64,000 nucleotides of DNA, taken from positions 186,001-250,000 of IMG/VR virus record IMGVR_UViG_3300020178_000002. One strand, given 5' to 3'. The position numbers and the translations under genes were made by a program. The notes beneath the pieces are model-generated. The model worked only from the letters and a program-made list of their open reading frames with translations, made no database searches and had not been told where the DNA came from. Shown one piece after another: positions 4,738 through 64,000 of the stretch (position 1 is the stretch's first letter; every line of letters begins with the position of its first letter).

Positions 4738-5465
4738 TTAATCTTGAACTTGATTTTTATTTGAGTGTCTTCACTGACGACACTTTCGGGAGGTCGAGTA
4801 TCGAAGTTATAGTTCAGCTCATTTACTACTGAAAATACCTTATTGATCTTGAACTCAATAGACCCTGTAGTCAGTATTCTGTAGTCTGAAAAGTTGTTAA
4901 ACAAAGGCTGATAATAGGTGATAATCTGACCTTTGATGTGATCATCCCAACTTTTTCCAATCTTCAAATAAGAAGTCCCTCTCGGGTTTAAAGATTTTTT
5001 ATTTGAACCTTTAATCTTCTCATAATCAGACATTCCCCCTATGCCCACAGCTATTAATTCTTTCAAGAAAGTAAATCTTAAACCACAACCTGTGAGCTGT
5101 CTCAAAGTAAGGAGTTTAAAATCATCTTTCTGGAATTGAGTGAATACCTCTGTTCCTAAATTACTCCACCACATTGCTGTCCATCTTAAGTGAGAATAAG
5201 ACTCGTTTTGAAAGGTACTCTCTTGGTTTTCACCATGAGAAGTAGAGCCTATAATCAAACCATGATGGATATCTCCTACAAAGTCTAACCTAAGACCTGC
5301 TTGGTATTGAAAGACACTTACGTTCCCTCTTTGAAGGAAGAGACTAGATTCCACAGACCCATGAGATCCTTTAGGTTTAGAACCTCGATCACTTTCAATA
5401 TTAACGACCTGCCCATAAGAATATAAAGGCAGAGAAAGTAAGATAGACAGCAACAAGTTTCTCAT
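4731..5465 (-). CDS. outer-membrane beta-barrel protein, DUF481/YdiY-like
   Basis: Signal peptide MRNLLLSILLSLPLYSYG-Q, alternating beta-strand pattern, C-terminal beta-signal ending IKIKFKIKW. Confidence 0.7.
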   Translation of the reverse strand: MRNLLLSILLSLPLYSYGQVVNIESDRGSKPKGSHGSVESSLFLQRGNVSVFQYQAGLRLDFVGDIHHGLIIGSTSHGENQESTFQNESYSHLRWTAMWWSNLGTEVFTQFQKDDFKLLTLRQLTGCGLRFTFLKELIAVGIGGMSDYEKIKGSNKKSLNPRGTSYLKIGKSWDDHIKGQIITYYQPLFNNFSDYRILTTGSIEFKINKVFSVVNELNYNFDTRPPESVVSEDTQIKIKFKIKW

Positions 5466-32828: not shown

Positions 32829-33254
32829 ATGGACTTTGATAATGTTCTGACATCAAATGCGATGTTTATAAAAGAGTACTTGGCTCATAAGGAAATACCG
32901 ATTGAAGAAGCAGAGCCTATGGTGACTTACTTTAGGATTTATGAGAAAGAAGGCAAACTTCTTGCACATCATAGTATTCCTCCATTAGAGCTTGGCGATG
33001 AAGATCCAGAGATGTGGTCTACTTTAATCAACCATAAGCTACACAATCAAGATCTACCCAACTTTATGTTCTTCGGTATCTGTGAGATTGAAGAAGAAGA
33101 CTTACTGTTTGTAGTCTGCTATTTTGGAGGCGAGGGTAAAATTGAAAGCCGATTATTTGACTTAGAGCTTAAGGACATGTCTGAGTTTGATGTTAAAGAT
33201 GCTTTCCCTAACTTTGACATCATTGACTTTAGTAAAGCCGATATCGCCCACTGA
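32829..33254 (+). CDS. hypothetical acidic protein (141 aa)
   Basis: AAGGAG RBS. Confidence 0.7.
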   Translation: MDFDNVLTSNAMFIKEYLAHKEIPIEEAEPMVTYFRIYEKEGKLLAHHSIPPLELGDEDPEMWSTLINHKLHNQDLPNFMFFGICEIEEEDLLFVVCYFGGEGKIESRLFDLELKDMSEFDVKDAFPNFDIIDFSKADIAH

Positions 33255-34242
33255 AAACCATTCTTAGGTATCTTGAAGCAACTCTGGAAGCAGTCTTTCC
33301 TTTTTCTTCTTTTTCCTTAGAGCCTTTGTTTATAACCTCAACATACTTTTTAGCTCTGTCTTTTACTTCATTCAGAGCTTTCTCCATCTCTTTTTCATAG
33401 GCTTCTTGATCAAAGACCCCATCCTTAATAAAAGAGGATAGGGCTTTTACTTCATCTTTTGATGGAACACTATAGATTCCTTTGTAAAGTTGATCGAGAA
33501 GATCTTGGCTGGTGACTTCCTTTGCAGATTTCTTTTTATACTGCTTGGCTTCAGCTTCATTTCTACTTTTAACATATTTCTCATGCTTATCTATTTTATT
33601 TAGATCTAAGAGATTCACTCCCGCTTCAAAAAGGAAAGGAATTGCATAAATACCACCTGCAATAGCCTTACCAGAAACAGACAAAGCTGCCCCAGCTAAT
33701 CCTGTCATTGCAGAAATGCCGTACCTGCCAACCTCTTTGCCGATTTCTTTAGAAGCTTCTGAAAGATGTTCCATAGCAGTAGTCTTACTTTTCATAAGGC
33801 TATCTGTCATCTTTTCTTCTTCACCTTCTTTAAGGTCTTTCTTAAAGACTTTCTTGAAGAATTGACCCATCTCTTTTTTGATCTTCTCTTGGCTTTTAGG
33901 GTCAGGGTTTGCAAAAAGGTTGAAGCCTTTTTCAAAAGCAGTTGAGGGATTGTCTATTTTAGCTGAAAGGCTTCTAGGGATTCTTTTAAGTACCTTGACC
34001 GCACCTCCAGCCATAGTGGAGTTCCAATCTTTGAGTGCCCTTGCAGCAGACTCGTCATAATTCTCCATAATCCTATCGGTGAAGAACTCTTTCTTATTAT
34101 AGTACTTTTCTTTTTTCTTCTTATAGCTCTCCAAGAACTTTTTAGCATCTTCATGCTGGGCACTATCAGGGTCAGAGGCATAAGACTCAACAGTATCTAA
34201 GTAGATTTTCTTCTTTTTATAATAGACTACCTTTTTAGCCAT
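33229..34242 (-). CDS. hypothetical protein with hydrophobic segment and KTASRVASRYLR tail
   Basis: 337 aa; Gly/Ala-rich apolar segment. Confidence 0.75.
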   Translation of the reverse strand: MAKKVVYYKKKKIYLDTVESYASDPDSAQHEDAKKFLESYKKKKEKYYNKKEFFTDRIMENYDESAARALKDWNSTMAGGAVKVLKRIPRSLSAKIDNPSTAFEKGFNLFANPDPKSQEKIKKEMGQFFKKVFKKDLKEGEEEKMTDSLMKSKTTAMEHLSEASKEIGKEVGRYGISAMTGLAGAALSVSGKAIAGGIYAIPFLFEAGVNLLDLNKIDKHEKYVKSRNEAEAKQYKKKSAKEVTSQDLLDQLYKGIYSVPSKDEVKALSSFIKDGVFDQEAYEKEMEKALNEVKDRAKKYVEVINKGSKEKEEKGKTASRVASRYLRMVFSGRYRLY

Positions 34243-34247
34243 CTTAT

Positions 34248-35831
34248 TTACCTTCTCTCAAGCTCAATAATTTGTTTTGTGTTGTAGATACTTGCAGGGT
34301 AGGGGCTTAGAGAGATGTTGAAGAAGAGATAATGAGAACCATACTCTGACTCCTTCTTTAAGTCACCTGCCTCAATAGTGTAAGTGCCCTCTGAAAGAGA
34401 CCTACTTTGCATGGAGTTGTATCTTTGGATGGCACTTTGAAAAAACTTTAAGATAGTCTCCATCTTCCTTTCTTGACTGCTAGTAAAAGGAGTGCTTGAT
34501 TCTACTTCAAATCTAAATTGAACAGGGGAATCTGGGAGTGTTTTAGGTGTTTCAGATACAACATGGTTTGCGAAAGAGCTTCTTGTCTGCGTTTCCATTT
34601 TTTTAATAAGTTGTAATGGGATGGTCTTTTTAATAGAGGCTTGTTTCTCGGGACTCCTTTTCTTATGCTTAATCTTCCTAGAGCTACCTTTAGCAACATC
34701 TCTTTCTCTGTTCTGGTGTACACCTTTTCCAGAGCTGCCTACTCCATCTTCAAACATACCAGAGGTGTTAGGGTCTCTGAACTTAGGCATCTTGTTAGAA
34801 GGTTTACGCTTCTTTTTCTTTTTTTTCCCTGCAAGCCTAGACATGTTGTCTAGGTCTCTGAGGGCGAGGTCTATCATACTAAACCTACCTGTAATCGCAT
34901 GACCATCAAGTAAGTTAGCAAGCATTATAGCTTTCTCTCTCCTTGAGATGCCCTCAGGTAAAGACTCAAGAGCTAATCTAGCTTCTTCATCACCTACTGT
35001 AGTTTGAGATTGAATGCAGGGTAATACAGAAGCCATTCTTGAAGTTTGCTTAGGTAGGTGTCTGATAATCTCTGGAAATCTTGAGATTTCTTTAATGGTT
35101 CTTACAACTCTCCTACCCTCAATAAGCCTTACAGAGGGGATAGGGCTTCTTTCAAATTCGAGAGTGTAGTCTTCAATGCCAGGCACAGAGATTTTGTAAG
35201 TAGGGTTTTCATCAGTAGTTGACCATTGGTTTTCTACAATCAAGAAACCGAGGTGTCTTATGTTAGAAACTATTTCTCTAACTGCTTGAGGGAATGTTGT
35301 CCCTAAGCTAGCCATGATTTGTCTGCCATCAGGAGTAACTTCTCTGTCTATCATAAGAGCAGGTCTTCTAACTAAAAAGTTAGGCCATTTCTCAAACCAC
35401 TTGTTGTAGAAGTCATCTTCCCCAACAACTCTTACAGTTTTATCTGGGTTAGGGATATTGGGGTCTGCAACATGTACTTCATAACTTCCCTTTTCACCTG
35501 TCACATCATAAATCAGAGATGCGTGACTCCAATCACGACCCTCAGGATTCCATGCAATGAGAACAGGTCTACCTGAATCTGTCCATTCTTTAACTTGAGT
35601 GAGGGTAGCTGGTGTGGTGAGGGTAGCTCTACAACCGAAGTATTGGCAGCAGGCAAGTACTTCTTCCCACCTTGATCCTCTTAGTGCTTGAGCACCAATG
35701 ATCTCATTAACAGTTTCCTCATCACACTTTACACCTAGTGCTTGTAAAGCCATGCATGTAGAGGTTGCAACACAAGTGAACTGTGTTCTTTGTCTAATTG
35801 GCTTAACATCAGCTTTTGCTTTTCTTCTCAT
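34248..35831 (-). CDS. C39-like (papain-fold) cysteine peptidase fused to additional modules
   Basis: Q..Q.TC (catalytic Cys), PV.I.W...WSHA.L (His), V.VADP (Asp), followed by about 350 aa of unrelated segments. Confidence 0.8.
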   Translation of the reverse strand: MRRKAKADVKPIRQRTQFTCVATSTCMALQALGVKCDEETVNEIIGAQALRGSRWEEVLACCQYFGCRATLTTPATLTQVKEWTDSGRPVLIAWNPEGRDWSHASLIYDVTGEKGSYEVHVADPNIPNPDKTVRVVGEDDFYNKWFEKWPNFLVRRPALMIDREVTPDGRQIMASLGTTFPQAVREIVSNIRHLGFLIVENQWSTTDENPTYKISVPGIEDYTLEFERSPIPSVRLIEGRRVVRTIKEISRFPEIIRHLPKQTSRMASVLPCIQSQTTVGDEEARLALESLPEGISRREKAIMLANLLDGHAITGRFSMIDLALRDLDNMSRLAGKKKKKKRKPSNKMPKFRDPNTSGMFEDGVGSSGKGVHQNRERDVAKGSSRKIKHKKRSPEKQASIKKTIPLQLIKKMETQTRSSFANHVVSETPKTLPDSPVQFRFEVESSTPFTSSQERKMETILKFFQSAIQRYNSMQSRSLSEGTYTIEAGDLKKESEYGSHYLFFNISLSPYPASIYNTKQIIELERR

Positions 35832-35882: not shown

Positions 35883-37139
35883 CTATCTCAGATACCTGGA
35901 CACAACTCTTTGTATAGAAGACTTTCTTCTTCTAAAGAGCCTATCCAATAAGCTACCCTCTTCTTTTTTCAACTCTTCGATTTTTGTTTTAGCAAATTCT
36001 TTAATTTCATCCACCTTAGCTGTAAGGCTTGGGTTTCTAGATTCTGAATTTTTTGACATACTATCAAGATCTATTAAGAGGTCTTTGACCTGCCTTATAG
36101 ACCTTGAACTTTTAATCTCATCTTCTCTTTTTAGAACATTGCTTGCGAACTCTACAGTTTGCTTAAAGGCTTCGACCTCTAAGAAGAAAGCTGATTCTTT
36201 TCTGATATCCTTCCCAAGTACTTTCTTCATTTCAACAATCCAAGAGTTAACAATTCTTAGAGACTCTTTTAGTTTTGAGTTAGAGATCATAGAGGGGTCT
36301 TTTTTTACTCGAAGTATAATCTTAGCAACTTTTCCTTTAATCTCAGTAACTCTGTTTCCTTTTTGCTTTTTTGCAATCTCCCTCATCTCATCAGTCATGC
36401 CCTTAACATCTCTCATTTGAAAGATTCTGTAGGGGTCTATTCCTTTAAGACCATTTACATTTCGACCTGATAAAGAAAAGGATCTAGGGAAATATGTATT
36501 TTTAAACTCAAAGCCATTAAGATTATAGTTTTTAATGTGGGCACAGAATGTACCTCCCTCAAAATAAAAACTGCCCTCTGATTGAATTCTAAGCTGGTCA
36601 CAATTAACATCACCCATTTTTGTATCTTTAAAAGTACAGTTCTTGAAGATGAGTGTGAAGCTTGAGCCTAATGTCCCGAACCTACAGCTTTTAAAGTGAC
36701 AGTTCACAAACTCAAAAGAACCACCTCTCTCCTTTAACCTCTCAGCTCTCTGGAAAGAATTTTCAAGACCCAAAGAGTGTGAAAAATAGGTATCTTCAAA
36801 TATTTCTCCACTAACTTCACCACTGTCTCTCTTTCTTTCTTTTCTCTCACTCGCATTGTCGAAATCATAGAAAATTGCTTCAAAGACAGTTGAGTTTTTT
36901 ACTTGGTCAACCCATTCCTGAGAAGACTCTTCTTCTTTGTTGTAGAAATCTTCATTGAGGTCTTCAAAATGGGTAGAAGCATCATCATAGCTGTCGAATT
37001 CAAATTTCTCTACTTCTCTAGACAGCTCTACCTTACTCCCCTTTATAATTTGATAGGTTATGACAGGTACATAATACACTATAGATTTATCATGTGAGGG
37101 ATTGCTGAAATTGAAATGCTTATGTGAATTTTTTCTCAT
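35883..37139 (-). CDS. pentapeptide-repeat-like protein with IQRVVSRYLR tail
   Basis: FVNCHFKSCRF...FKNCTFKDTKM beta-helix-like pentads; 418 aa. Confidence 0.65.
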   Translation of the reverse strand: MRKNSHKHFNFSNPSHDKSIVYYVPVITYQIIKGSKVELSREVEKFEFDSYDDASTHFEDLNEDFYNKEEESSQEWVDQVKNSTVFEAIFYDFDNASERKERKRDSGEVSGEIFEDTYFSHSLGLENSFQRAERLKERGGSFEFVNCHFKSCRFGTLGSSFTLIFKNCTFKDTKMGDVNCDQLRIQSEGSFYFEGGTFCAHIKNYNLNGFEFKNTYFPRSFSLSGRNVNGLKGIDPYRIFQMRDVKGMTDEMREIAKKQKGNRVTEIKGKVAKIILRVKKDPSMISNSKLKESLRIVNSWIVEMKKVLGKDIRKESAFFLEVEAFKQTVEFASNVLKREDEIKSSRSIRQVKDLLIDLDSMSKNSESRNPSLTAKVDEIKEFAKTKIEELKKEEGSLLDRLFRRRKSSIQRVVSRYLR

Positions 37140-53110: not shown

Positions 53111-53178
53111 AATTCATGCTGAGTGCAAGAAAATTTATAAGAGGGGTTGAACAAAGAAAAATAAAAGGAGAGAGATTG

Positions 53179-53769
53179 ATGATTGTTATACATCATGGGA
53201 GTGGAGTAGAAACAGCTTTAGGAGAGCTGCTAGAAGATAAGAATCTTGTTAAGCCACCTTATAAGGATTTAAAAGCAGATGCTGTGAGAGATCTTGTAGC
53301 TACTTATTCACAAGTATGGCCTATTAGGAATCCTGTAATAGTTGCTGGTCCTCTTGATGAAGCTAATCCCTCAACTTTAGATATTCTGTTGAAAAGAATA
53401 GAAGAACCTCTTGAGGGTTCTCCAGAGTTAATTCTGTGGGCTAGAGATTATGGTTCTGTTCCTCCAACTATTAGATCACGCTGTGGTGAACAGTTTCATT
53501 ATCAGTTTGTAGGTCAACATGAACTATATCAGTTAGCAGAAACGCTCTTAAAAGGACTTTTAGAGAAAAACCTAGTGGTTGTATCGGATTCACTAAGAAA
53601 AGTCGATACAGGTCAATACAGAGCTTTTCTTGAAGCTTATGTGGAAGTTGTTTTAGATAAGAAAGAAGTAGATTTGTATACAGAAGATCTGAAGATGGTT
53701 TTAAGAAGACCTAGAGTAAGTCAAATAGCCTTGTATGGATTCTTTTTAGGGGGTCTGAAATGTCAGTAA
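53179..53769 (+). CDS. clamp-loader delta-prime-like subunit (HolB-like)
   Basis: LLKRIEEP...LIL......VPPTIRSRC; the likely start is ATG 53179. Confidence 0.7.
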   Translation: MIVIHHGSGVETALGELLEDKNLVKPPYKDLKADAVRDLVATYSQVWPIRNPVIVAGPLDEANPSTLDILLKRIEEPLEGSPELILWARDYGSVPPTIRSRCGEQFHYQFVGQHELYQLAETLLKGLLEKNLVVVSDSLRKVDTGQYRAFLEAYVEVVLDKKEVDLYTEDLKMVLRRPRVSQIALYGFFLGGLKCQ

Positions 53770-54677
53770 TGGTTTTACATGGGAACTCAAAGAGTTATAT
53801 CCAGATTAGATCTCAAGAGATTCTTGAAGAATACAGAGCGAATGGTTATGAAGTCAGAGATCTTTCCCCAAAGAGTGAACTCTCTCTGGAAGAGTGTTTC
53901 AGCTCTGGTTTGTTTGACACAAGCCCTATTTTAGTTTTTGTTAAGAACCCTATGAAAGTTAAAGGTCTTAGTGCTTACTTGAAAGATACAAGGGGTTGTG
54001 AGGTTCTTGTATGTTATGACAAGGATAAATTGCCGAAGATGTTAACAGGCTATATGTCTCAATGTTTTACAGAGCCTAAATACGACAATCAGAAATTAGA
54101 TTGGTGTGCTAAGTTTGTATCAGACTATGTAGAAAGGCACGGGAAGAAGATTTCGAAAGATCTTTCAAAGGCTGTTGTTTCAAAAGTAGGTACAGATCTT
54201 GGTGTCCTTCGATTTGAGGTCTTGAAATATGTCATGTCAAGCGAGGGGGAAGATATTACTCCACGAACCATTGCAGGGAACTTGGGGGATTTGACAGGGC
54301 CAGAGTCTTCTGATTTGATTGACTCTATCATAAGCAGAGACTCGAGAAGATTTCTTAAGGTATGTGCCAAGATAGAAAAGAGTAGTTCAACAGATCAAAC
54401 GATGGCTGTTTGTAATGGTCTTTTGTTCTACACTTTAAGACAGTTATTTGACGTAGGTGTTTTGCTTGCAGAAAAATATACACCCGATCAGATTGCAAAT
54501 GATTTAGGAAAGAACCCTTGGTTGGTACAAAATATATTAAAGCCTCAAGTTGAGTCATTGGGTCTTGAAAGAATTATTCTTTTAATAGAGTCTCTATATA
54601 ACTCAGAGAATTCTGTTCTGAAAGGTTCACGAAACCCTTGGAGCAAATTCAAGTCAGAAATCTTAAGAAACATTTAA
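53760..54677 (+). CDS. clamp-loader delta-like subunit (HolA-like)
   Basis: VG.DLG.L..E..K lid motif, PWLV...., E..LKG; 305 aa. Confidence 0.7.
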   Translation: MSVMVLHGNSKSYIQIRSQEILEEYRANGYEVRDLSPKSELSLEECFSSGLFDTSPILVFVKNPMKVKGLSAYLKDTRGCEVLVCYDKDKLPKMLTGYMSQCFTEPKYDNQKLDWCAKFVSDYVERHGKKISKDLSKAVVSKVGTDLGVLRFEVLKYVMSSEGEDITPRTIAGNLGDLTGPESSDLIDSIISRDSRRFLKVCAKIEKSSSTDQTMAVCNGLLFYTLRQLFDVGVLLAEKYTPDQIANDLGKNPWLVQNILKPQVESLGLERIILLIESLYNSENSVLKGSRNPWSKFKSEILRNI

Positions 54678-54715
54678 ATGAAGCCCACAAGGTTATAGTG
54701 GGCGAAGGATATGAA

Positions 54716-57391
54716 ATGAAGGTTCAATTCTCAGACCACGCAAATTCTTTGTTGAAATCTTATTACATGAAAGATAGTGATGCTTCTGTTGAAGATGCTT
54801 TTAAAAGAGCCTCTTTTGCATACACACCGAACAAGGAGTTGGCTCAAAGAATATATGAGTATGCTTGTAAGGGCTGGTTTATGTTTAGCTCTCCAATTCT
54901 ATCTAATGCTGAAAGTTCAGGTATGCCTATTTCTTGCTTTCTCTCGTATGTAGAAGACACAGTAGAAGGGTTGATTGAACACACGGAAGAATTAAGATGG
55001 ATGTCTGTGATGGGTGGTGGAGTAGGAGGCCATTGGGATCATGTTCGTTCAGTGAGCAAGAAATCTCCTGGTCCTATTCCTTTCTTAAAGACTGTTGATT
55101 CAGATATGGTTGCATACAGACAAGGATTAACTCGAAAGGGTTCTTATGCAGCATATATGGATGTGAGTCACCCAGACATTATTGAGTTCTTGAACTTGAG
55201 ATTGCCAACAGGTGGAGACCCAGCTAGGAAATGTTTTAATCTTAACAATGCAGTAAATCTGACTGATGAGTTCATGAGTGCAGTTATGGCTGGTGATAAG
55301 TGGGATCTTGTAGACCCTAAGGACAAGACTGTTCGTAATACAGTAGATGCTCGTGAGCTTTGGCAAAGAATCCTTGAGGTTCGCTTTAGGACAGGAGAAC
55401 CTTATCTTAACTTCATTGACGAGGCGAACCGACACCTACCTCAACCTCTCAAAGATAAGGGCTTGAAGATTCATGGTTCAAACCTTTGTGTTCGAGGTGA
55501 CACACAAGTACTTACTCGTGATGGTTATTTCCAGATCTCATCTTTGGATAATCAAGATGTTGAGGTTTGGAACGGAAAAGAATGGTCTATGACCACCGTT
55601 GTCCAAACAGGAGAAGATCAAGAGATCCTTGAGGTTGTTCTTGACAATGGGACTACTCTTTACACAACACCTTATCACAAGTTTTATGACCATAAGGGTC
55701 ATGTGGCAGAGGCCAAAGATTTAACCACTTCCACAAAGCTCTTGAAGTTTGAGATGCCTGTGGTTGAGGGTAGGGGCGATTGGGAGAACGCTTATTCTTG
55801 TGGGTTCTTCACAGGAGACGGGACATACAACCACCTCCATCAACCAATATCTTATCTTTACGGTAAGAAGAAGGCATTACTTGACAGGGTCGCCACACCT
55901 CTTTGTCGAGTCCACACAGGTTCTAAATCGGATCGGTTTTCAGTTCTCCATGACAAGTCCGAAATCAAAGCAAAGTACGAAGTGCCTCTTGGTATGTCCT
56001 TAAGCACTCGCTTAAAGTGGCTCTCGGGACTCTTAGATGCAGATGGTTGCGTGGCTAGGAATGGGCTAAATCAAAGCTTACAGCTTGCGTCTACAAATCG
56101 AGACTTTCTCACCGATCTGTGTCTCATGTTAAATACACTTGGAGTTCAGCCCAGAGTGTCAGACTTCATGCCTGAGAGAACGGTAAACTTTGGCTCGGAG
56201 AGGGGTGGTGAGTATCGTTGTAAGGAAGCATGGAGGATCTTAATCAACTCTAACGATACTCAAAAGCTACTTGGATTGGGCTTGGAAACTCATCGTCTAG
56301 TCTTGAAGGAGCACAAGCCACAAAGGTCAGCTTCAAGGTTTGTTCGTGTCCTTAGTGTCTCTAAGTCACAGGATGCAGACACTTATTGTTTCAACGAACC
56401 GAAGAGACACATGGGGGTGTTTAATGGTGTTCTTACAGGCAACTGTAATGAAATTCATCTCCCAACAGGTAAAGGTAGGTCTGCTGTTTGTTGCCTTTCA
56501 AGCCTTAATGTGGAGATGTTTGATGAGTGGAAAGACACAACTATTGTTGAAGACTTGATTGAGTTTCTTGATGATGTTTTACAGTACTTCATTGAGAATG
56601 CTCCCCCTCAGTTAGGGAAAGCTATCTACAGTGCCAAGAGAGAAAGGTCTTTGGGTCTGGGTACTATGGGTTTCCATGCTTACCTCCAAAAGAAGGGTCT
56701 TCCCTTTGAGTCTGTCTTTGCTGTTTCAGCTAATCGTAAGATTTACTCAACCATTAAGGAAAGGGCAGTTGCTTCTTCAAAGCGTCTAGCAGAAATCAAA
56801 GGTGAGTATCTTGATGGTATTGGATCTGGCATGAGAAATAGCCACCTGCTTGCTATTGCTCCAAATGCTAACTCAGCTATTATTCTTGATACAAGCCCAA
56901 GCATTGAACCTTGGAAGTCAAATGCTTTCACACATAGAACCAGAGCAGGTTCTTTTCTTCAGTTTAATAAGCATCTAATGGCTGTGCTTGAAAAGCATAG
57001 TCCAGAAGAAGATAAGCAAGAGTGGATTGACTCACAGGTTCAGTCTATTATTTTAGCTCAAGGTTCTGTGCAACATTTAGAGTATTTAAGTGACTTTGAG
57101 AAAAATACTTTTAAGACAGCATTTGAGATTGACCAGATGTGGATAGTGGAACACGCTTCTGTAAGACAGGAGTGGGTCTGTCAGGGTCAATCTGTAAACT
57201 TGTTCTTCCCTGCTGGTTCAGACAAGAACTATGTGAACGCTGTTCACCTTTCAGCATGGAAGAAGAAGCTCAAGGGTCTGTATTATCTCCGAACCAATGC
57301 AGGTGTAGTTGCTGACAAGGTTAGTGAGAAGATTGAGCGTAAGGCATTGAAGGATTATGACATTGATGAATGTATGAGCTGTCAGGGTTAG
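54716..57391 (+). CDS. nrdA: ribonucleotide reductase class Ia alpha subunit (intein-containing, no ATP cone)
   Basis: SSPIL, ISCF, GGGVG, R.G..A.Y...HPD, SNL|C NEI, LA.APNA, CQGQS.NL, LYYLR, C-terminal ECMSCQG. Confidence 0.95.
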   Translation: MKVQFSDHANSLLKSYYMKDSDASVEDAFKRASFAYTPNKELAQRIYEYACKGWFMFSSPILSNAESSGMPISCFLSYVEDTVEGLIEHTEELRWMSVMGGGVGGHWDHVRSVSKKSPGPIPFLKTVDSDMVAYRQGLTRKGSYAAYMDVSHPDIIEFLNLRLPTGGDPARKCFNLNNAVNLTDEFMSAVMAGDKWDLVDPKDKTVRNTVDARELWQRILEVRFRTGEPYLNFIDEANRHLPQPLKDKGLKIHGSNLCVRGDTQVLTRDGYFQISSLDNQDVEVWNGKEWSMTTVVQTGEDQEILEVVLDNGTTLYTTPYHKFYDHKGHVAEAKDLTTSTKLLKFEMPVVEGRGDWENAYSCGFFTGDGTYNHLHQPISYLYGKKKALLDRVATPLCRVHTGSKSDRFSVLHDKSEIKAKYEVPLGMSLSTRLKWLSGLLDADGCVARNGLNQSLQLASTNRDFLTDLCLMLNTLGVQPRVSDFMPERTVNFGSERGGEYRCKEAWRILINSNDTQKLLGLGLETHRLVLKEHKPQRSASRFVRVLSVSKSQDADTYCFNEPKRHMGVFNGVLTGNCNEIHLPTGKGRSAVCCLSSLNVEMFDEWKDTTIVEDLIEFLDDVLQYFIENAPPQLGKAIYSAKRERSLGLGTMGFHAYLQKKGLPFESVFAVSANRKIYSTIKERAVASSKRLAEIKGEYLDGIGSGMRNSHLLAIAPNANSAIILDTSPSIEPWKSNAFTHRTRAGSFLQFNKHLMAVLEKHSPEEDKQEWIDSQVQSIILAQGSVQHLEYLSDFEKNTFKTAFEIDQMWIVEHASVRQEWVCQGQSVNLFFPAGSDKNYVNAVHLSAWKKKLKGLYYLRTNAGVVADKVSEKIERKALKDYDIDECMSCQG
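55487..56443 (+). mobile_element. intein with LAGLIDADG homing endonuclease (319 aa)
   Basis: Begins C-V-R-G-D-T; block B TTPYHKF; CGFFTGDG and LSGLLDADG; ends GVLTGN before the +1 Cys. Confidence 0.93.
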
Positions 57392-60516: not shown

Positions 60517-60927
60517 ATGAGTAAGAATGTTCCTGTAGACAAAAAGCTCTGGTCTGAAATTCAATCCCTAGCAAAAGGTGAGAGAAAGACACCTGTTTCT
60601 AGGGGCAAAGAAACTGTGAACCCTGTCAACAATGGTTCAGGGTTTAAAGTATTCCCATCTGCTTATGCCAATGGCTGGGCTTTGGCTCAGTACAAAAGAC
60701 TAGGTGGCAAGTGGAAGAAAGAAAGCTCAGAGTTCAAAGAGCCTCGCAAGTGGGACAAAGAACACTGTGAATCTAAGACCTGTGATGAGATGGGCTTTTC
60801 AGAAAAGGCATCTTGTAGACCTTATAAGAACTGCTACAAGAAATCGAGTACTGAAGAATCTCTATTGTATAATGTTGTAAACAGATACATGGAGAAAATA
60901 TATGACAGTCGAAGAGATCGTTTTTAA
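60517..60927 (+). CDS. DUF5872-like phage protein
   Basis: LW......AK...FKVFPSAYANGW....YKRLGGKWK, recognised from memory. Confidence 0.6.
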   Translation: MSKNVPVDKKLWSEIQSLAKGERKTPVSRGKETVNPVNNGSGFKVFPSAYANGWALAQYKRLGGKWKKESSEFKEPRKWDKEHCESKTCDEMGFSEKASCRPYKNCYKKSSTEESLLYNVVNRYMEKIYDSRRDRF

Positions 60928-61915
60928 GATCAAAAGTTTAGAATGGGATATTCAAAATCTTAGCTTGGATAATTCCAGAGTCCAAAAGATTACAATGGCT
61001 CTTTCTTCTTTGAATAACTTAGTCCAGAATAAAGTTTCGGAAGCGGACACAGATTCAGGGGACTTAGAGAAAGACGATAGACAGAGGTCTAGCACATTCA
61101 ATGGTATGTCTGCTAAAGAGTGGGTTCTCAATAGCAGGAATGTCTGGTCTGATGTCTTTCAACCACCAAGAACAAAAGAAGAAGCAGAACATGGAGCAAC
61201 TTACCCTAAAAGCCTAACTGATAGGCTTATCTCCATGTATTCAAAAGAAGGCGATTTAGTTTTCGATCCTTTTTTGGGTACAGGTACTTCCTTAATGTCT
61301 GCCATATTTAAGAACAGAGATGCTGTTGGTATTGAACTTAACCCAGAGTTCTTTGAGTTTGCTCAAAAGAGAGTTAACTCAGAGTATTCAATGTTCAGCA
61401 CATGTGATGTAAAGCTATATAACGATAACTGTATGAACTTGGACAACTACTTAAAAGATGAGTCTGTTCAACTTACAGTGACTTCCCCACCTTACGCTGA
61501 CTTTATCCAGAAGTCTTTAGAGGACAGGGCTAAGGTACACAAGGACTCTATTATAAAGAACAAGAATAACTCATCGGTTCGTCAGTATTCTACATCGAAA
61601 GAAGACTTTGGGAACTTACCTTATGATGAGTTCTTAAAAGAGGCACAGGGTCTCCTAAGTCTTATCCTCAAGAAGACAAAGAGTGGAGGTTATGGTGCTT
61701 GGGTTGTTAAAGATTATAGAGACACGAAGAATGGCATTCCTTATGTAGACTTCCATTCTGACTTAGCTAAGGTTGGAGAGGCAGCAGGTTTTAAATACCA
61801 TGACCTTATTGTTTGGGATCAGAGTAATCAGAGAAGTCTTTTTCTACAGGGATACCCTAGTAAGTTTTACACAAACCAAAACTCTAGCTTCATCGTTGTC
61901 TTTAGGAAAGACTAG
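60902..61915 (+). CDS. amino (N4C/N6A) DNA methyltransferase, motif I before SPPY
   Basis: HGATYP..L..RLI..YS..GD.V.DPFLGTGT, followed by TSPPY. Confidence 0.88.
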   Translation: MTVEEIVFKIKSLEWDIQNLSLDNSRVQKITMALSSLNNLVQNKVSEADTDSGDLEKDDRQRSSTFNGMSAKEWVLNSRNVWSDVFQPPRTKEEAEHGATYPKSLTDRLISMYSKEGDLVFDPFLGTGTSLMSAIFKNRDAVGIELNPEFFEFAQKRVNSEYSMFSTCDVKLYNDNCMNLDNYLKDESVQLTVTSPPYADFIQKSLEDRAKVHKDSIIKNKNNSSVRQYSTSKEDFGNLPYDEFLKEAQGLLSLILKKTKSGGYGAWVVKDYRDTKNGIPYVDFHSDLAKVGEAAGFKYHDLIVWDQSNQRSLFLQGYPSKFYTNQNSSFIVVFRKD

Positions 61916-61966
61916 TTTCTGTTTTGTAGTTTTTTAATGGTCTGCCTTAAAACACAGGAGGTAGTT

Positions 61967-64000
61967 ATGTCCAAAAAAGCTGTCAAAAGAGATGACCCTA
62001 AAAAAAAGAACACAGGTGAAGGTGGTCTTGATACATGGTTTGCAGGGCATGGTGGTGGTAAACCTGATGAAAGAGCAACATGGGGTGATTGGGTTTCTAT
62101 AACTCCTGTTAAGAAAACAATAACTAAAGAAGATGGATCTAAGAAGACATATGAACCAGGTGACATTGTTGGCCCATGTGGGATATCTAGTGACCCAGAG
62201 TGGTCATCCATTACAGAGAATGGAAAAAAGCCCCTCAAATGTATGCCAAGAGAAAAAGCTCATGATATGGCAAAAAAAGACAGAGCAGAACTCGCTAAGA
62301 ACAAGAAAAAACAAGAGAGTGGTGGAAAGAAGCCTACTAACACTCCTACCTTTTCTGAGGAAGCTAAAGAAGTTTTAGACAAGAAGTCTGCTCTAGGGAT
62401 TACTAGAAACTCTAGGGCTGTATCGAAGCTGAAAAAAGCTATCTTACACCTTTTAGCTTTCTATGCAGAAGATCAAGACAAGAAGATTACAGAGTTCTTG
62501 AGCCTTGTTTTGGATAAAGTCGAGTCTAGGCTTCAAAATCAGTTCAATATCAGAAGGTTTTCTTTAGAATCTGCTTCAATAAATAGGTATGACCCTTCTG
62601 CAACTAACATTTCCCTTTACTATGCGATAAATGGGGGGAGTTATAGGGTAGACCTGAACATAGGGTATTCAAACCAATACTCTAGATTTAATAGCAATGT
62701 TCCTTTGAGAAAGAGAATGGGTGTAGCTCTGTACTCCATAAAAAAGGTGGCAAGTAGTTCTATCTTAATCCCACCCCCACCCTCTGAAGAAGAACACCTC
62801 CGAGAGCTTTCTGAAGTATCGTATCAGTATGAAAATAGATATAATGCTCCAGAGTTGCAGGACGCTTTAGATTCAAGTTCAGAACATCTTTTTTCAAATC
62901 TCTTACTAGAACATGGTCATGTTGAGTCACCTGTTAACATCAAATCTATGATGGATGGGATTCTGGGAAGTATAGTTATTCATAAAAGCTTCTTCAATGT
63001 CTCAAGGCCTAATGTTCTAGCTAGCAAACATGGTATTCCATTTAAGTATGACTACTTAGAGTCTGCACAGACACCTAGCTACCCTAGTGGACACACAGCT
63101 CAGGCTTACTATGCTGCTCTCTTACTTGCTGATAAATACCCTCTCCTGAGAGAGGGTTTATTAAATATAGCCAGGATGGTTGAACAATCGAGAGTAGATA
63201 GAGGTGTCCATTACCCTTCAGACAACAAGGCAGGTAAACTACTCGCTACTGTTCTTTATGAGAATAAGAAGCTAGGAAAGAAAGCAGACTTCTTTAGAGA
63301 AGTATCTCCACCAGATTCTTTAACAAGTTTAAATCAAGGAAGTCATGGTAAGGATGAGAACCCCGATGGTGTAAATGACCACAGTTCTTTGCCTAATGGG
63401 GATTCAGCAAGGAATATAGGCAGACCTTCTCCAGATTCTCCTAATCTGAAGTATAAAGATCTTCACAATCAACCTAGACCTACAAATGTTATAGACAGAG
63501 GGTATGTGAATAACAGTGGTAGTGGTTCAGCGAGGGTCATACCTCAGTCTTTAAAACAAGCTGGTTCTCAACCTGCACAAGATTTAGCTGGTGTGAAGAC
63601 ATGGGTGACTAAGACCAGACAAGATCAAATAAATAATGACACTAACCCCGAAAAGACAAGAGCAGATTATGAAGACGGTAAGCCTCAGAGAGACAGAGTT
63701 CTACCTTTACCTAGTGGACACCCAGAGGGGAGAACGGAAGACAGGGCAGCACCGAAAGGATTTAATACTGTGCCCGATTCTAGTGGTCAGGGTGGACAGA
63801 ATAGACCACCGAAAGATCCAAGTGCATTAAAAGACCAACCAGAGGGTAAAGCACTACACGAAAGACCTCGATCTAGTGCTGTTCCAGGAGAGAACTATGG
63901 ACATCCTTATATAGATCAGTCTACTTCTACGGGTCTTAAACGCAGAATTGTGGGAAATACTGAATTCTGGGATGTTGAAGATGGTGAGGTTGTGGCTGGT
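61967..64000 (+). CDS. 3'-truncated multidomain protein: DUF5872-like N-terminus, PAP2 acid-phosphatase domain, low-complexity tail
   Basis: Open from ATG 61967 (AGGAGG RBS) to the window end, 678 codons, absent from the track. PAP2 motifs K-x6-RP (KSFFNVSRP), PSGH and SR-x5-H-x3-D (SRVDRGVHYPSD) at about 62984-63223. Confidence 0.85.
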   Translation, partial: MSKKAVKRDDPKKKNTGEGGLDTWFAGHGGGKPDERATWGDWVSITPVKKTITKEDGSKKTYEPGDIVGPCGISSDPEWSSITENGKKPLKCMPREKAHDMAKKDRAELAKNKKKQESGGKKPTNTPTFSEEAKEVLDKKSALGITRNSRAVSKLKKAILHLLAFYAEDQDKKITEFLSLVLDKVESRLQNQFNIRRFSLESASINRYDPSATNISLYYAINGGSYRVDLNIGYSNQYSRFNSNVPLRKRMGVALYSIKKVASSSILIPPPPSEEEHLRELSEVSYQYENRYNAPELQDALDSSSEHLFSNLLLEHGHVESPVNIKSMMDGILGSIVIHKSFFNVSRPNVLASKHGIPFKYDYLESAQTPSYPSGHTAQAYYAALLLADKYPLLREGLLNIARMVEQSRVDRGVHYPSDNKAGKLLATVLYENKKLGKKADFFREVSPPDSLTSLNQGSHGKDENPDGVNDHSSLPNGDSARNIGRPSPDSPNLKYKDLHNQPRPTNVIDRGYVNNSGSGSARVIPQSLKQAGSQPAQDLAGVKTWVTKTRQDQINNDTNPEKTRADYEDGKPQRDRVLPLPSGHPEGRTEDRAAPKGFNTVPDSSGQGGQNRPPKDPSALKDQPEGKALHERPRSSAVPGENYGHPYIDQSTSTGLKRRIVGNTEFWDVEDGEVVAG

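What the first reader, a model, noticed from the sequence alone, without database searches (positions are those of the whole stretch)
61967..64000. Unlisted giant ORF: PAP2 phosphatase embedded in a tag-punctuated polyprotein
At least 678 codons with modules delimited by KSA|L, KVA|S, KKA|D and KQA|G. The KVAS-to-KKAD piece holds a complete PAP2/class-A acid phosphatase active site with no TM helices. A soluble phosphatase or haloperoxidase-fold enzyme released from a virion polyprotein could act on lipid carriers, nucleotides or immune signals at infection (inference).
Basis: partly seen in the sequence, partly recalled or inferred. Interest (0 to 1): 0.68.

Follow-up and report, generated by a model that had tools for sequence, protein, structure and literature searches.

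The report
Tag-punctuated phage cargo protein with phosphatase
This gene of an uncultured 312 kb marine jumbo phage encodes a 99 kDa chain of swappable modules, one of them a soluble acid-phosphatase-type enzyme, joined by remnants of a short peptide tag that the phage's head-assembly proteins also carry, so it is probably enzyme cargo loaded into the capsid, though that has not been shown.

Summary
The ORF is real but not giant. A strong ribosome-binding site puts the start at window 61967, and it ends 598 nt beyond the window, giving 876 aa (99.5 kDa). Residues 273-450 form a confident PAP2 domain (Pfam 41.7 bits; all three catalytic motifs invariant in 74 relatives; AF2 pLDDT 96.8). It is closest in fold to soluble class A acid phosphatases and has no TM helix or signal peptide.

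The real signal is a longer tag, KK[AS]S[AS]xRVAxRYLx[SA]A, which separates modules in relatives and has decayed to KKxA here. Relatives shuffle the modules and replace PAP2 with Dps-like, SOD, NUDIX, CCA-transferase, 2H, GNAT or peptidase domains.

The tag core is enriched six-fold in this genome and biased to protein ends. It is conserved on the head protease, the scaffold-like protein and a large head-module protein.

Best reading (inference): a polyvalent, capsid-targeted cargo protein, possibly cut at the tags. Packaging, cleavage and substrate are untested.

The parts
61967..64000 (+). Window part of the 876-aa cargo gene. It continues to G000 250598 (L002:2968-5598), 598 nt past the window.
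   Evidence: The start is set by the RBS and by where homologues start.
61956..61961 (+). Shine-Dalgarno AGGAGG, 5 nt upstream of ATG 61967
61967..62392 (+). Module A (aa 11-152), the hallmark of the family. 41 invariant columns in 28 sequences from different architectures. It ends in ...TPTFSEEAKEVLDKKSA|. Function unknown.
   Evidence: No Pfam match. DUF5872 is only a lead from the atlas. No PDB fold match.
62393..62440 (+). Degenerate tag or spacer (aa 153-168, LGITRNSRAVSKLKKA|), in the place where relatives have ...ASxSRVAxRYLxSA|
62441..62752 (+). Module B (aa 169-272). Unknown function, found mainly in the closest relatives. It ends in IKKVA|S, a near-canonical RVA|S site.
62753..63286 (+). 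PAP2 phosphatase module (aa 273-450, 19.9 kDa, pI 6.2)
62984..63010 (+). PAP2 motif 1, K350-x6-R357-P358
   Evidence: invariant in 74 sequences
63083..63094 (+). PAP2 motif 2, P383-S-G-H386
63188..63223 (+). PAP2 motif 3, S418-R-x5-H425-x3-D429
63287..63562 (+). Module D (aa 451-542, DFFREVSPPDSL...GSGSARVIPQSLKQA|). Low complexity but 55-68% conserved. It is often the N-terminal module in relatives, always after [KR][KR]x[SA].
63563..64000 (+). Module E, first part (aa 543-688, |GSQPAQDLAGVKTWV...). E (to aa 760) and the basic tail F (761-886, 33% K+R) lie beyond the window. In relatives E-F is fused to a Dps-like domain.
60517..60927 (+). hyp136, 'module H' of the same system. In relatives it is fused directly upstream of module A through a tag. 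Here it is a separate gene ending in a degenerate tag (NVVNRYMEK...), and a DNA methylase gene (60902-61915) lies between it and the cargo gene.
33229..34242 (-). 337-aa protein with a canonical C-terminal tag (...KTASRVASRYLRMVF...)
   Evidence: 16.6 bits against a shuffled maximum of 6.2
34248..35831 (-). 527-aa protein with an N-terminal papain/C39-like cysteine peptidase domain. The domain is ~80% conserved in 4 of 5 relatives, and in two of them it carries its own C-terminal tag.
   Evidence: Peptidase_C39_2 22.7 bits, below the cut-off of 24
35883..37139 (-). 418-aa protein ending exactly in a tag (...SSIQRVVSRYLR*)

Best explanation
The gene encodes a single-copy mosaic cargo protein, of the 'polyvalent protein' kind, in a marine jumbo phage distantly related to Bacillus phage G.

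The protein is a chain of six modules:
- A: conserved, function unknown
- B: function unknown
- a soluble PAP2 phosphomonoesterase
- D and E: conserved low-complexity modules
- F: a strongly basic tail

Related phages permute the same modules and swap the enzyme for other effectors. Their modules are separated by a ~16-residue tag, KK[AS]S[AS]xRVAxRYLx[SA]A.

Shown here:
- the modular, shuffled architecture
- an intact PAP2 catalytic site and fold
- the existence of the tag, its enrichment and its bias to protein ends
- conservation of the tag on the head protease, the scaffold-like protein and another head-module protein

Inferred:
- The tag works like the T4 capsid targeting sequence. [quoted passage not shown]
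- The chain would then be packaged, trimmed into pieces including a ~20 kDa phosphatase starting near S273, and ejected with the DNA.
- The phosphatase would act early on a soluble phosphate ester, most likely a nucleotide or an RNA end.

In this particular protein the tags have decayed to KKxA remnants, with one near-canonical KVA|S. Its processing is therefore less certain than that of its relatives.
For: PAP2:
- Pfam match above its cut-off and PDB sequence hits to class A acid phosphatases.
- K350, R357, P358, P383-H386, R419, H425 and D429 are invariant in 74 sequences.
- AF2 pLDDT 96.8. Top fold matches are PhoN, PhoC and the P. aeruginosa acid phosphatase, TM 0.64-0.69.

Modularity:
- 97 homologues share blocks q11-152, 273-450, 448-542, 543-758 and 765-886 in permuted order.
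- Their other domains include Dps-like, SOD, NUDIX, CCA-transferase, 2H, GNAT, C39 peptidase and LPD1/ART-PolyVal, plus HExxH zincin modules in the PAP2 slot.

Tag:
- 56 tags in 93 family proteins. 39 are followed within 2-4 residues by the start of module A, E or D, and 6 are C-terminal.
- In this genome RVA[SA] occurs 17 times against 2.8 +/- 1.6 in shuffles.
- 9 of the 17 lie within 30 aa of a protein end (P 2.7e-3).
- 4 lie in the 3,915-aa head module against 0.11 expected (P 5.7e-6).
- The tag is kept at matching positions in relatives: protease 5 of 6 genomes, scaffold-like protein 4 of 5 at 41-52% identity, and the large protein upstream of the protease at ~33% identity.
- K-x-A sites coincide with homology boundaries (P 3.3e-5).

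Context:
- The order portal - primase - cargo modules - Dps-like - DUF6011 - terminase is conserved in relatives.
- A stand-alone E-module gene starts M-AQPAQDL, exactly where the tag ends in fused forms.

Parallel:
- 42 of 120 stand-alone PAP2 relatives carry a different terminal peptide, MKLLREYIRE, against 0.41 expected.
- Seven to nine clustered genes of another jumbo phage share that peptide.
- It resembles the T4 CTS MKTYQEFIAE, after which internal proteins are cut and retained (PMC8442874; PMC3012670).
- Polyvalent, capsid-packaged, protease-processed effectors are an established concept (PMC5512222).
Against: - There is no proteomic or other experimental evidence of packaging or cleavage for this phage or any relative. 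No cultured phage encodes the protein or the PAP2 family.
- P0002 has no canonical tag, only remnants.
- Tags at the extreme C-terminus (for example ...RVVSRYLR*) cannot serve as cleavage sites of the proposed kind. A pure docking role therefore fits them better.
- Some stand-alone PAP2 relatives sit among replication-type genes and carry no tag, so this enzyme family is not always a virion protein.
- Docking the tag to the protease gave no verdict.
- The strict tag is absent from phage G and Tunturi_5, so nothing can be carried over from characterised virions.
- The neighbourhood is mixed: replication genes sit beside portal and terminase.
Confidence: 0.5

Rival explanations
1. Targeting only, no cleavage. 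The tag is a docking peptide, comparable to an encapsulin cargo-loading peptide or a scaffold-binding helix. It anchors proteins inside the prohead, and the 99.5 kDa chain is packaged and ejected whole with the phosphatase active inside it.
For: - Tags occur at true C-termini with 0-10 residues after them, where cutting would achieve nothing.
- Tag position is free: N-terminal, internal or C-terminal.
- P0002's own junctions are degenerate.
Against: - 39 of 56 tags sit exactly at module starts and end in a small-small pair (SA, AA, AG).
- The protease and the scaffold-like protein, the classic substrates of head proteases, carry the tag.
- A stand-alone E-module gene begins exactly at the tag's end.
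- Relatives carry peptidase modules.
Confidence: 0.2
2. Not a virion protein. It is a cytoplasmic multi-domain effector made during infection. The tag is a short linear motif that binds some other hub (a chaperone, a replication compartment or a host factor), and head-assembly proteins happen to use it too.
For: - The neighbourhood mixes replication genes (clamp loader, RNR, primase, methylase) with portal and terminase.
- Untagged stand-alone PAP2 relatives lie among helicase and nuclease genes.
- There are no packaging data.
Against: - The tag is enriched about 36-fold in the head module and conserved there across genomes.
- The basic tail and the fused Dps-like DNA-binding domain suit a protein packed with DNA.
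- Distant relatives share LPD1/ART-PolyVal domains with proteins predicted to be injected.
Confidence: 0.2
3. The chain is processed, but by a dedicated peptidase rather than the head protease. Candidates are the C39-like cysteine peptidase (window 34248-35831) and the zincin modules seen in relatives. This is the autoprocessing scheme proposed for polyvalent proteins.
For: - The C39-like gene lies between two genes with canonical C-terminal tags.
- C39 and HExxH modules occur inside relatives' chains.
- Tags end in a small-small pair, which is reminiscent of double-glycine leaders (resemblance from general knowledge, not tested).
Against: - The C39 match is below Pfam's cut-off.
- In two relatives the peptidase itself carries a C-terminal tag, which makes it look like cargo.
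- It is absent from one of five related genomes that still have module A.
- The tag on the head protease and scaffold points to the head protease.
Confidence: 0.07
4. There is no functional tag. The junction motifs are chance matches or scars of DNA recombination, with no role at protein level.
For: - K-x-A is at chance frequency.
- Hybrid junctions such as SARVIPQSLKQA|G suggest recombination inside tag-like sequence.
Against: - RVA[SA] occurs at six times the shuffled expectation, with a bias to protein ends.
- It is conserved at the amino-acid level at matching sites in proteins only ~33-50% identical.
- It occurs on unrelated proteins at their termini.
Confidence: 0.03

Closest known systems
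Bacterial class A non-specific acid phosphatases (PhoN of Salmonella, PhoC, the Escherichia blattae and P. aeruginosa enzymes), PAP2 superfamily PF01569
   Same: - The all-helical fold matches (TM 0.64-0.69).
- The KX6RP / PSGH / SRX5HX3D active site is identical.
- It is soluble, with no membrane helices.
   Different: - Only 19-24% identical, and far below the NCBIfam equivalog cut-off (29 bits against 430).
- About 35 residues shorter.
- No signal peptide. It is embedded in a 99.5 kDa phage chain, or tagged when stand-alone, so it is not exported by the Sec route those periplasmic enzymes use.
Polyvalent proteins of phages and conjugative elements (Iyer et al. 2017, PMC5512222)
   Same: - One polypeptide holds many unrelated effector modules.
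- It is phage-encoded, in a phage with a portal-terminase packaging system.
- Relatives carry LPD1, ART-PolyVal, zincin peptidase, GNAT and 2H domains.
- The predicted logic is the same: package, process, inject.
   Different: - PAP2, Dps-like and SOD modules and modules A, D, E and H are not named in that paper (PAP2: 0 occurrences).
- Modules here are separated by a conserved peptide tag that head-assembly proteins share, a feature that paper does not describe.
- P0002 itself has no peptidase module.
Phage T4 internal proteins with the capsid targeting sequence (CTS, MKTYQEFIAE)
   Same: - A short peptide shared by otherwise unrelated proteins.
- In T4 it directs them into the scaffolding core and is cut off by the prohead protease, and the diverse cargo is injected as counter-defence.
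- The MKLLREYIRE peptide on stand-alone PAP2 relatives matches the T4 CTS at 5 of 10 positions plus the aromatic residue.
   Different: - The tag of this clade (RVAxRYL) has a different sequence and occurs at N-termini, C-termini and internally, not only at the N-terminus.
- No T4-type protease family was detected (though the control was uninformative). The head protease here matches phrog_18299.
- Nothing has been tested experimentally.
Prohead-protease substrates of giant phages (SPN3US gp245, phiKZ, 201phi2-1; PMC10052503)
   Same: In those phages the protease cuts itself, the portal and abundant ejection proteins at a short conserved motif (A-x-E). Several cuts can fall within one propeptide.
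   Different: - The motif and the phage lineage differ.
- Those substrates lose propeptides. They are not described as chains of shuffled enzyme modules.
Encapsulin cargo-loading peptides (PMC8346489)
   Same: Short terminal peptides load enzymes, including ferritin-like proteins, into an HK97-fold shell. Here a compact 292-aa HK97-type capsid protein and Dps/ferritin-like cargo are involved.
   Different: This is an analogy only. No binding of the tag to the capsid protein was tested, and the sequences are unrelated.

Membership tests
PAP2 superfamily (PF01569) | Match to the family HMM above the curated cut-off | tested here: met
   41.7 bits against 27.2, E 1.2e-10, aa 347-439
PAP2 superfamily (PF01569) | Three catalytic motifs: KX6RP, PSGH, SRX5HX3D | tested here: met
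   aa 350-358, 383-386 and 418-429. All catalytic residues are invariant in 74 aligned sequences.
PAP2 superfamily (PF01569) | All-helical PAP2 fold | tested here: met
   AF2 pLDDT 96.8, pTM 0.92. 27 PDB matches at E <= 1e-3, all listed ones PAP2 enzymes.
PAP2 superfamily (PF01569) | Phosphatase activity | not testable with these tools
   Needs an enzyme assay of aa 273-450
Class A non-specific acid phosphatase (PhoN/PhoC) | Equivalog-level sequence match | tested here: not met
   NCBIfam PhoC 29.3 bits against a cut-off of 430
Class A non-specific acid phosphatase (PhoN/PhoC) | Secreted or periplasmic, with an N-terminal signal peptide | tested here: not met
   The domain is internal to the chain. 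There is no hydrophobic N-terminal segment (maximum hydropathy 1.09). Only 1 of 120 stand-alone relatives has a TM-like segment.
Class A non-specific acid phosphatase (PhoN/PhoC) | Closest solved fold | tested here: met
   Ranks 1-17 in Foldseek, TMq 0.63-0.69
Vanadium-dependent haloperoxidase | Large two-bundle architecture (>400 aa) and closest fold | tested here: not met
   The module is 178 aa. Haloperoxidases rank 39 or lower, E 0.025-0.47, TMt 0.25-0.30. Stand-alone relatives have only faint VCPO_2nd hits.
Membrane PAP2 lipid phosphatases (PgpB, LpxE, UppP-type) | Transmembrane helices around the active site | tested here: not met
   No TM segment. Equivalog scores of 22-24 bits against cut-offs of 229-250.
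Polyvalent proteins (Iyer et al. 2017) | Two or more unrelated effector domains in one phage or plasmid polypeptide | tested here: met
   Six independently shuffled modules. Only one of them (PAP2) has a known activity.
Polyvalent proteins (Iyer et al. 2017) | Shares signature domains (LPD, ART-PolyVal, MPTase) with catalogued members | tested here: inconclusive
   Absent from P0002. Present in relatives that share module A: P0083 has LPD1 at 27.7 bits and a weak ART-PolyVal match, and there are HExxH modules.
Polyvalent proteins (Iyer et al. 2017) | Packaged in the capsid and delivered with the DNA | not testable with these tools
   Needs virion proteomics
T4-type CTS-bearing internal proteins | Short N-terminal targeting peptide shared by unrelated proteins | tested here: inconclusive
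   A shared peptide exists, but with a different sequence and at any position. P0002's own N-terminus (MSKKAV) keeps only a KKA remnant.
T4-type CTS-bearing internal proteins | T4 gp21-type prohead protease (Peptidase_S77) in the genome | tested here: inconclusive
   No PF03420 match, but the control genomes did not ring either. A different head protease (phrog_18299, E 1.6e-16) is present.
Protease-processed viral polyprotein | Conserved motif at every junction, plus a protease gene | tested here: inconclusive
   Met at family level. In P0002 the junction motifs are degenerate.
Protease-processed viral polyprotein | Demonstrated cleavage products | not testable with these tools
   Needs N-terminomics or in vitro cleavage
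DUF5872 (PF19197), for module A | Match to the family HMM | tested here: not met
   No Pfam match at E <= 10. The only support is a language-model lead, score 0.88.

The most novel reading that the evidence does not exclude
A short, position-independent peptide (RVAxRYL in this clade, MKLLREYIRE in another) is a general address-and-cut label for loading enzyme cargo into jumbo-phage capsids, a counterpart of the T4 CTS. It would let these phages swap effectors as cassettes. The PAP2 module would be a recurrent injected effector. One possibility is a phosphatase that heals RNA or nucleotide ends alongside the CCA-transferase, 2H, NUDIX and HD modules it is fused to or clustered with (P0055, P0070, L091). 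No PAP2 enzyme is known to me to have that role.
Probability: 0.3. Interest if true: 0.8.

Novelty: new variant of a known kind. Interest (0 to 1): 0.62.

Why it matters
If the tag is a capsid-loading and cleavage signal, it gives a sequence-readable list of what an uncultured jumbo-phage lineage packs into its head and injects: phosphatase, superoxide dismutase, Dps-like protein, NUDIX, tRNA-repair-type enzymes and peptidases. It would also show that such cargo evolves by shuffling tagged cassettes. Both points would extend the T4 internal-protein paradigm and the polyvalent-protein concept to a widespread marine and salt-marsh phage group. A compact tag could also be used to load foreign proteins into large capsids. 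Separately, a large family of soluble PAP2 phosphatases with no signal peptide exists in phages: 340 stand-alone relatives in metagenomes and none in cultured phages. Its substrate is unknown, so this is an open biochemical question.

Tried and rejected
- Complex prediction of the head-protease core (L004:6866-7645) with a canonical tag peptide (aa 298-337 of the window 33229-34242 protein) gave no verdict: score 0.21 against a mark of 0.34. It is evidence neither way.
- Module A: no Pfam family, no PDB fold match by Foldseek or VIA-align (best Z 2.2). The AF2 model is only moderate (pLDDT 60, core ~78).
- Modules B, D, E and F have no Pfam family at E <= 10.
- Pfam Peptidase_S78 and S77 were not found in the genome. 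The S77 control was uninformative.
- tblastn of the whole protein and of a stand-alone PAP2 against 50,697 cultured-phage records found no match.
- The strict tag pattern is absent from Bacillus phage G and Tunturi_5, so published virion data cannot be carried over.
- No module has a paralogue in this genome.
- A frameshift fusion of the cargo gene with the downstream Dps-like gene is rejected. The stop and start overlap (ATGA) and the Dps frame is closed immediately upstream.
- A second PSGH at aa 592-595 is not a PAP2 motif. It is part of a separate conserved motif, RVLPLP[SDN]GHP.
- Distant PAP2 loci in IMG/VR (31-47% identity) carry no MKLLREYIRE tag.
- RNA-library contigs match parts of the gene exactly. 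DNA carry-over is not excluded, so this is only weak evidence of transcription.
- The large representative-protein search and the third word search were not used. The family scans and two word searches had already resolved the protein.
Full report
**The ORF.** The window is positions 186001-250000 of a 312,136-bp virus record with direct terminal repeats. An open frame enters at window 61937 and runs off the end. In the whole genome it closes at L002:5598, giving 886 codons. The product is therefore 876 aa, 99.5 kDa, pI 9.9. That is large but not giant. I number residues from the ATG at window 61937, so the protein spans aa 11-886. The gene is single-copy. The identical sequence recurs in salt-marsh, marine and seawater metagenomes from many studies. 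Short contigs from three metatranscriptome libraries match parts of it exactly, which is only weak evidence of transcription.

**The phosphatase.**
- Residues 347-439 match Pfam PAP2 above the cut-off, and PDB sequence hits are class A acid phosphatases.
- The motifs KX6RP (350-358), PSGH (383-386) and SRX5HX3D (418-429) are complete. Every catalytic residue is invariant across 74 aligned relatives.
- The 178-aa module folds alone at pLDDT 96.8.
- Its nearest solved structures are the soluble enzymes from P. aeruginosa, Salmonella (PhoN), PhoC and E. blattae (TM 0.64-0.69). Membrane PAP2 enzymes and vanadium haloperoxidases rank well below.
- It is not an equivalog of any named bacterial enzyme. 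It has no TM helix or signal peptide.
- The same unit occurs as a stand-alone gene of ~170-270 aa in 340 metagenomic proteins at 40-54% identity. Of the 120 listed, 106 have all three motifs and only 1 has a TM-like segment. None is in a cultured phage.

**Modularity.** BLAST against 97 homologues splits the protein into six blocks:
- A, aa 11-152
- B, aa 169-272
- PAP2, aa 273-450
- D, aa 451-542
- E, aa 543-760
- F, a basic tail, aa 761-886

The order is permuted in relatives. P0007 is D-PAP2-A-E-F, P0034 is D-PAP2-A, and P0015 is A-PAP2-D. The enzyme slot also varies: Dps-like, Fe/Mn SOD, NUDIX, CCA-transferase/poly(A) polymerase, 2H, GNAT, C39 peptidase, LPD1 and ART-PolyVal, and an HExxH zincin module exactly where PAP2 sits here. 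Module A is the hallmark of the family, with 41 invariant columns in 28 sequences, but it matches no known family or fold. hyp136 (window 60517-60927) is a further module of the system. Relatives fuse it upstream of A, whereas here a DNA methylase gene lies in between. The downstream Dps-like gene overlaps the stop codon (ATGA) and is a separate gene; relatives fuse E-F to it. The order portal - primase - cargo modules - Dps-like - DUF6011 - terminase recurs in relatives.

**The tag.** Even so, 4 of the 7 sites lie within 3 residues of the four homology-defined boundaries (P 3.3e-5). The reason shows up in relatives, where junctions carry the longer element KK[AS]S[AS]xRVAxRYLx[SA]A. Of 56 such tags in 93 family proteins, 39 are followed within 2-4 residues by the start of module A, E or D, and 6 are C-terminal. 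In this protein the tags have decayed to KKSA|L plus SRAVSKLKKA|I, KKVA|S, KKA|D and SARVIPQSLKQA|G.

**The tag beyond this family.**
- In the 328-gene proteome RVA[SA] occurs 17 times against 2.8 +/- 1.6 in shuffles.
- 9 of the 17 lie within 30 residues of a protein end (P 2.7e-3).
- A tag HMM gives 16.6 bits, against a shuffled maximum of 6.2, for two proteins of the window that end in the tag: 33229-34242 and 35883-37139.
- Four RVA[SA] sites fall in the head module, where 0.11 are expected (P 5.7e-6). They lie on the head maturation protease (phrog_18299), the acidic scaffold-like 555-aa protein, a 207-aa protein and a 455-aa protein. A looser copy (SARVANNYL) lies on the 942-aa protein just upstream of the protease.
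- In five related genomes the site is kept in the protease (WDKVRVASG, 5 of 6 genomes), in the scaffold-like protein (4 of 5, at 41-52% identity) and in the large upstream protein (~33% identity). The capsid protein is 97-99% identical among the four closest relatives and 75% in the fifth, and it has no tag.
- Across relatives' loci the tag occurs internally (29), at C-termini (8) and near N-termini (5).

**A parallel tag.** 42 of 120 stand-alone PAP2 relatives carry a different terminal peptide, consensus M-[NK]-L-L-R-E-Y-I-[RK]-E: 40 at the N-terminus and 2 at the C-terminus, against 0.41 expected. On a 299-kb contig of another jumbo phage, seven to nine clustered genes, including the PAP2 and an HD_4 protein, start with it. 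It matches the T4 capsid targeting sequence MKTYQEFIAE at five positions plus the aromatic residue, and it ends in I-x-E. In T4 the internal proteins are cut once next to that peptide and stay in the head (PMC8442874; PMC3012670). So this PAP2 family repeatedly carries short address peptides.

**Interpretation.** The shuffled architecture, the intact enzyme and the tag statistics are shown. Function is inferred from three things: the tag's presence on the proteins that head proteases classically process, the precedent of T4 and of giant-phage prohead proteases (PMC10052503), and the polyvalent-protein concept (PMC5512222; PAP2 is not mentioned there). The inference is that the tag brings proteins into the prohead and marks a cut after its final small residue, releasing modules that are ejected with the DNA. 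Three things weaken it. C-terminal tags fit docking better than cutting. P0002's own tags are degenerate. Untagged PAP2 relatives sit among replication genes. Another candidate for the processing enzyme is the C39-like peptidase (window 34248-35831), but it carries its own tag in two relatives and so looks like cargo. The single docking test gave no verdict. The substrate is open. Fusions with CCA-transferase (P0055) and NUDIX (P0070), and clustering with an HD_4 protein, point to nucleotide or RNA-end phosphates. Lipid carriers and halide oxidation are less likely.

**Relatives and novelty.** The nearest cultured phages by portal identity are Tunturi_5 (37%) and Bacillus phage G (27%). Neither has the protein or the strict tag. 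No paper in the library names this family or this tag. I rate it a new variant of a known kind: a polyvalent, CTS-like cargo system with a new tag and a new enzyme module.

Noticed in passing
L091:600-14850 (ENA 299-kb contig of another jumbo phage): Seven to nine of thirteen consecutive genes, including a stand-alone PAP2 and an HD_4-domain protein, begin with the same peptide, M-K/N-L-L-R-E/K-Y-I-R-E. It resembles the T4 capsid targeting sequence MKTYQEFIAE. 42 of 120 stand-alone PAP2 relatives carry it at one end.
   Followed up: partly
window 54638-57391 (+) and L002:7722-10844 (-): The ribonucleotide reductase large subunit and the terminase large subunit each carry an intein with a LAGLIDADG endonuclease domain.
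   Followed up: no
window 34248-35831 (-): A papain/C39-like cysteine peptidase with a long basic C-terminal region lies between two genes whose products end in canonical tags. The peptidase domain is ~80% conserved in relatives and is itself tagged in two of them.
   Followed up: partly
window 63695-63733, and L002:4966-4995 and 5290-5322: The apparently disordered modules E and F hold strictly conserved linear motifs: RVLPLP[SDN]GHP[EK]GR (aa 587-599) and two copies of [FI]WDV[ED]D.GE[LV][IV] (aa 677-686 and 785-795).
   Followed up: partly
relatives P0020, P0021, P0046, P0048, P0097: An HExxH (HELVHVYQ) zincin-type module occupies the slot where this protein has PAP2. It is preceded by the same V-x-P-P-P-P lead-in that precedes the PAP2 module.
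   Followed up: partly
G000:154632-155561 and 155740-156666 (outside the window): Tandem paralogues of ~310 aa with unknown function both end in TASQFPRVAS[VI]TRRLE, a C-terminal tag variant.
   Followed up: no
window 60902-61915 (+): An N6/N4 DNA methylase gene sits between module H (hyp136) and the cargo gene. Relatives have these two fused or adjacent, which suggests an insertion into the cargo locus.
   Followed up: no
window 53116-53769 and 53760-54677 (+): The clamp-loader (DNA polymerase III delta/delta'-like) function is split over two overlapping ORFs.
   Followed up: no
L106:1980-3212 (Bacillus phage G gp2): Phage G has an annotated zinc-dependent peptidase between terminase and portal. 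That is the same general position as the cargo locus here and recalls the zincin modules of the family.
   Followed up: no
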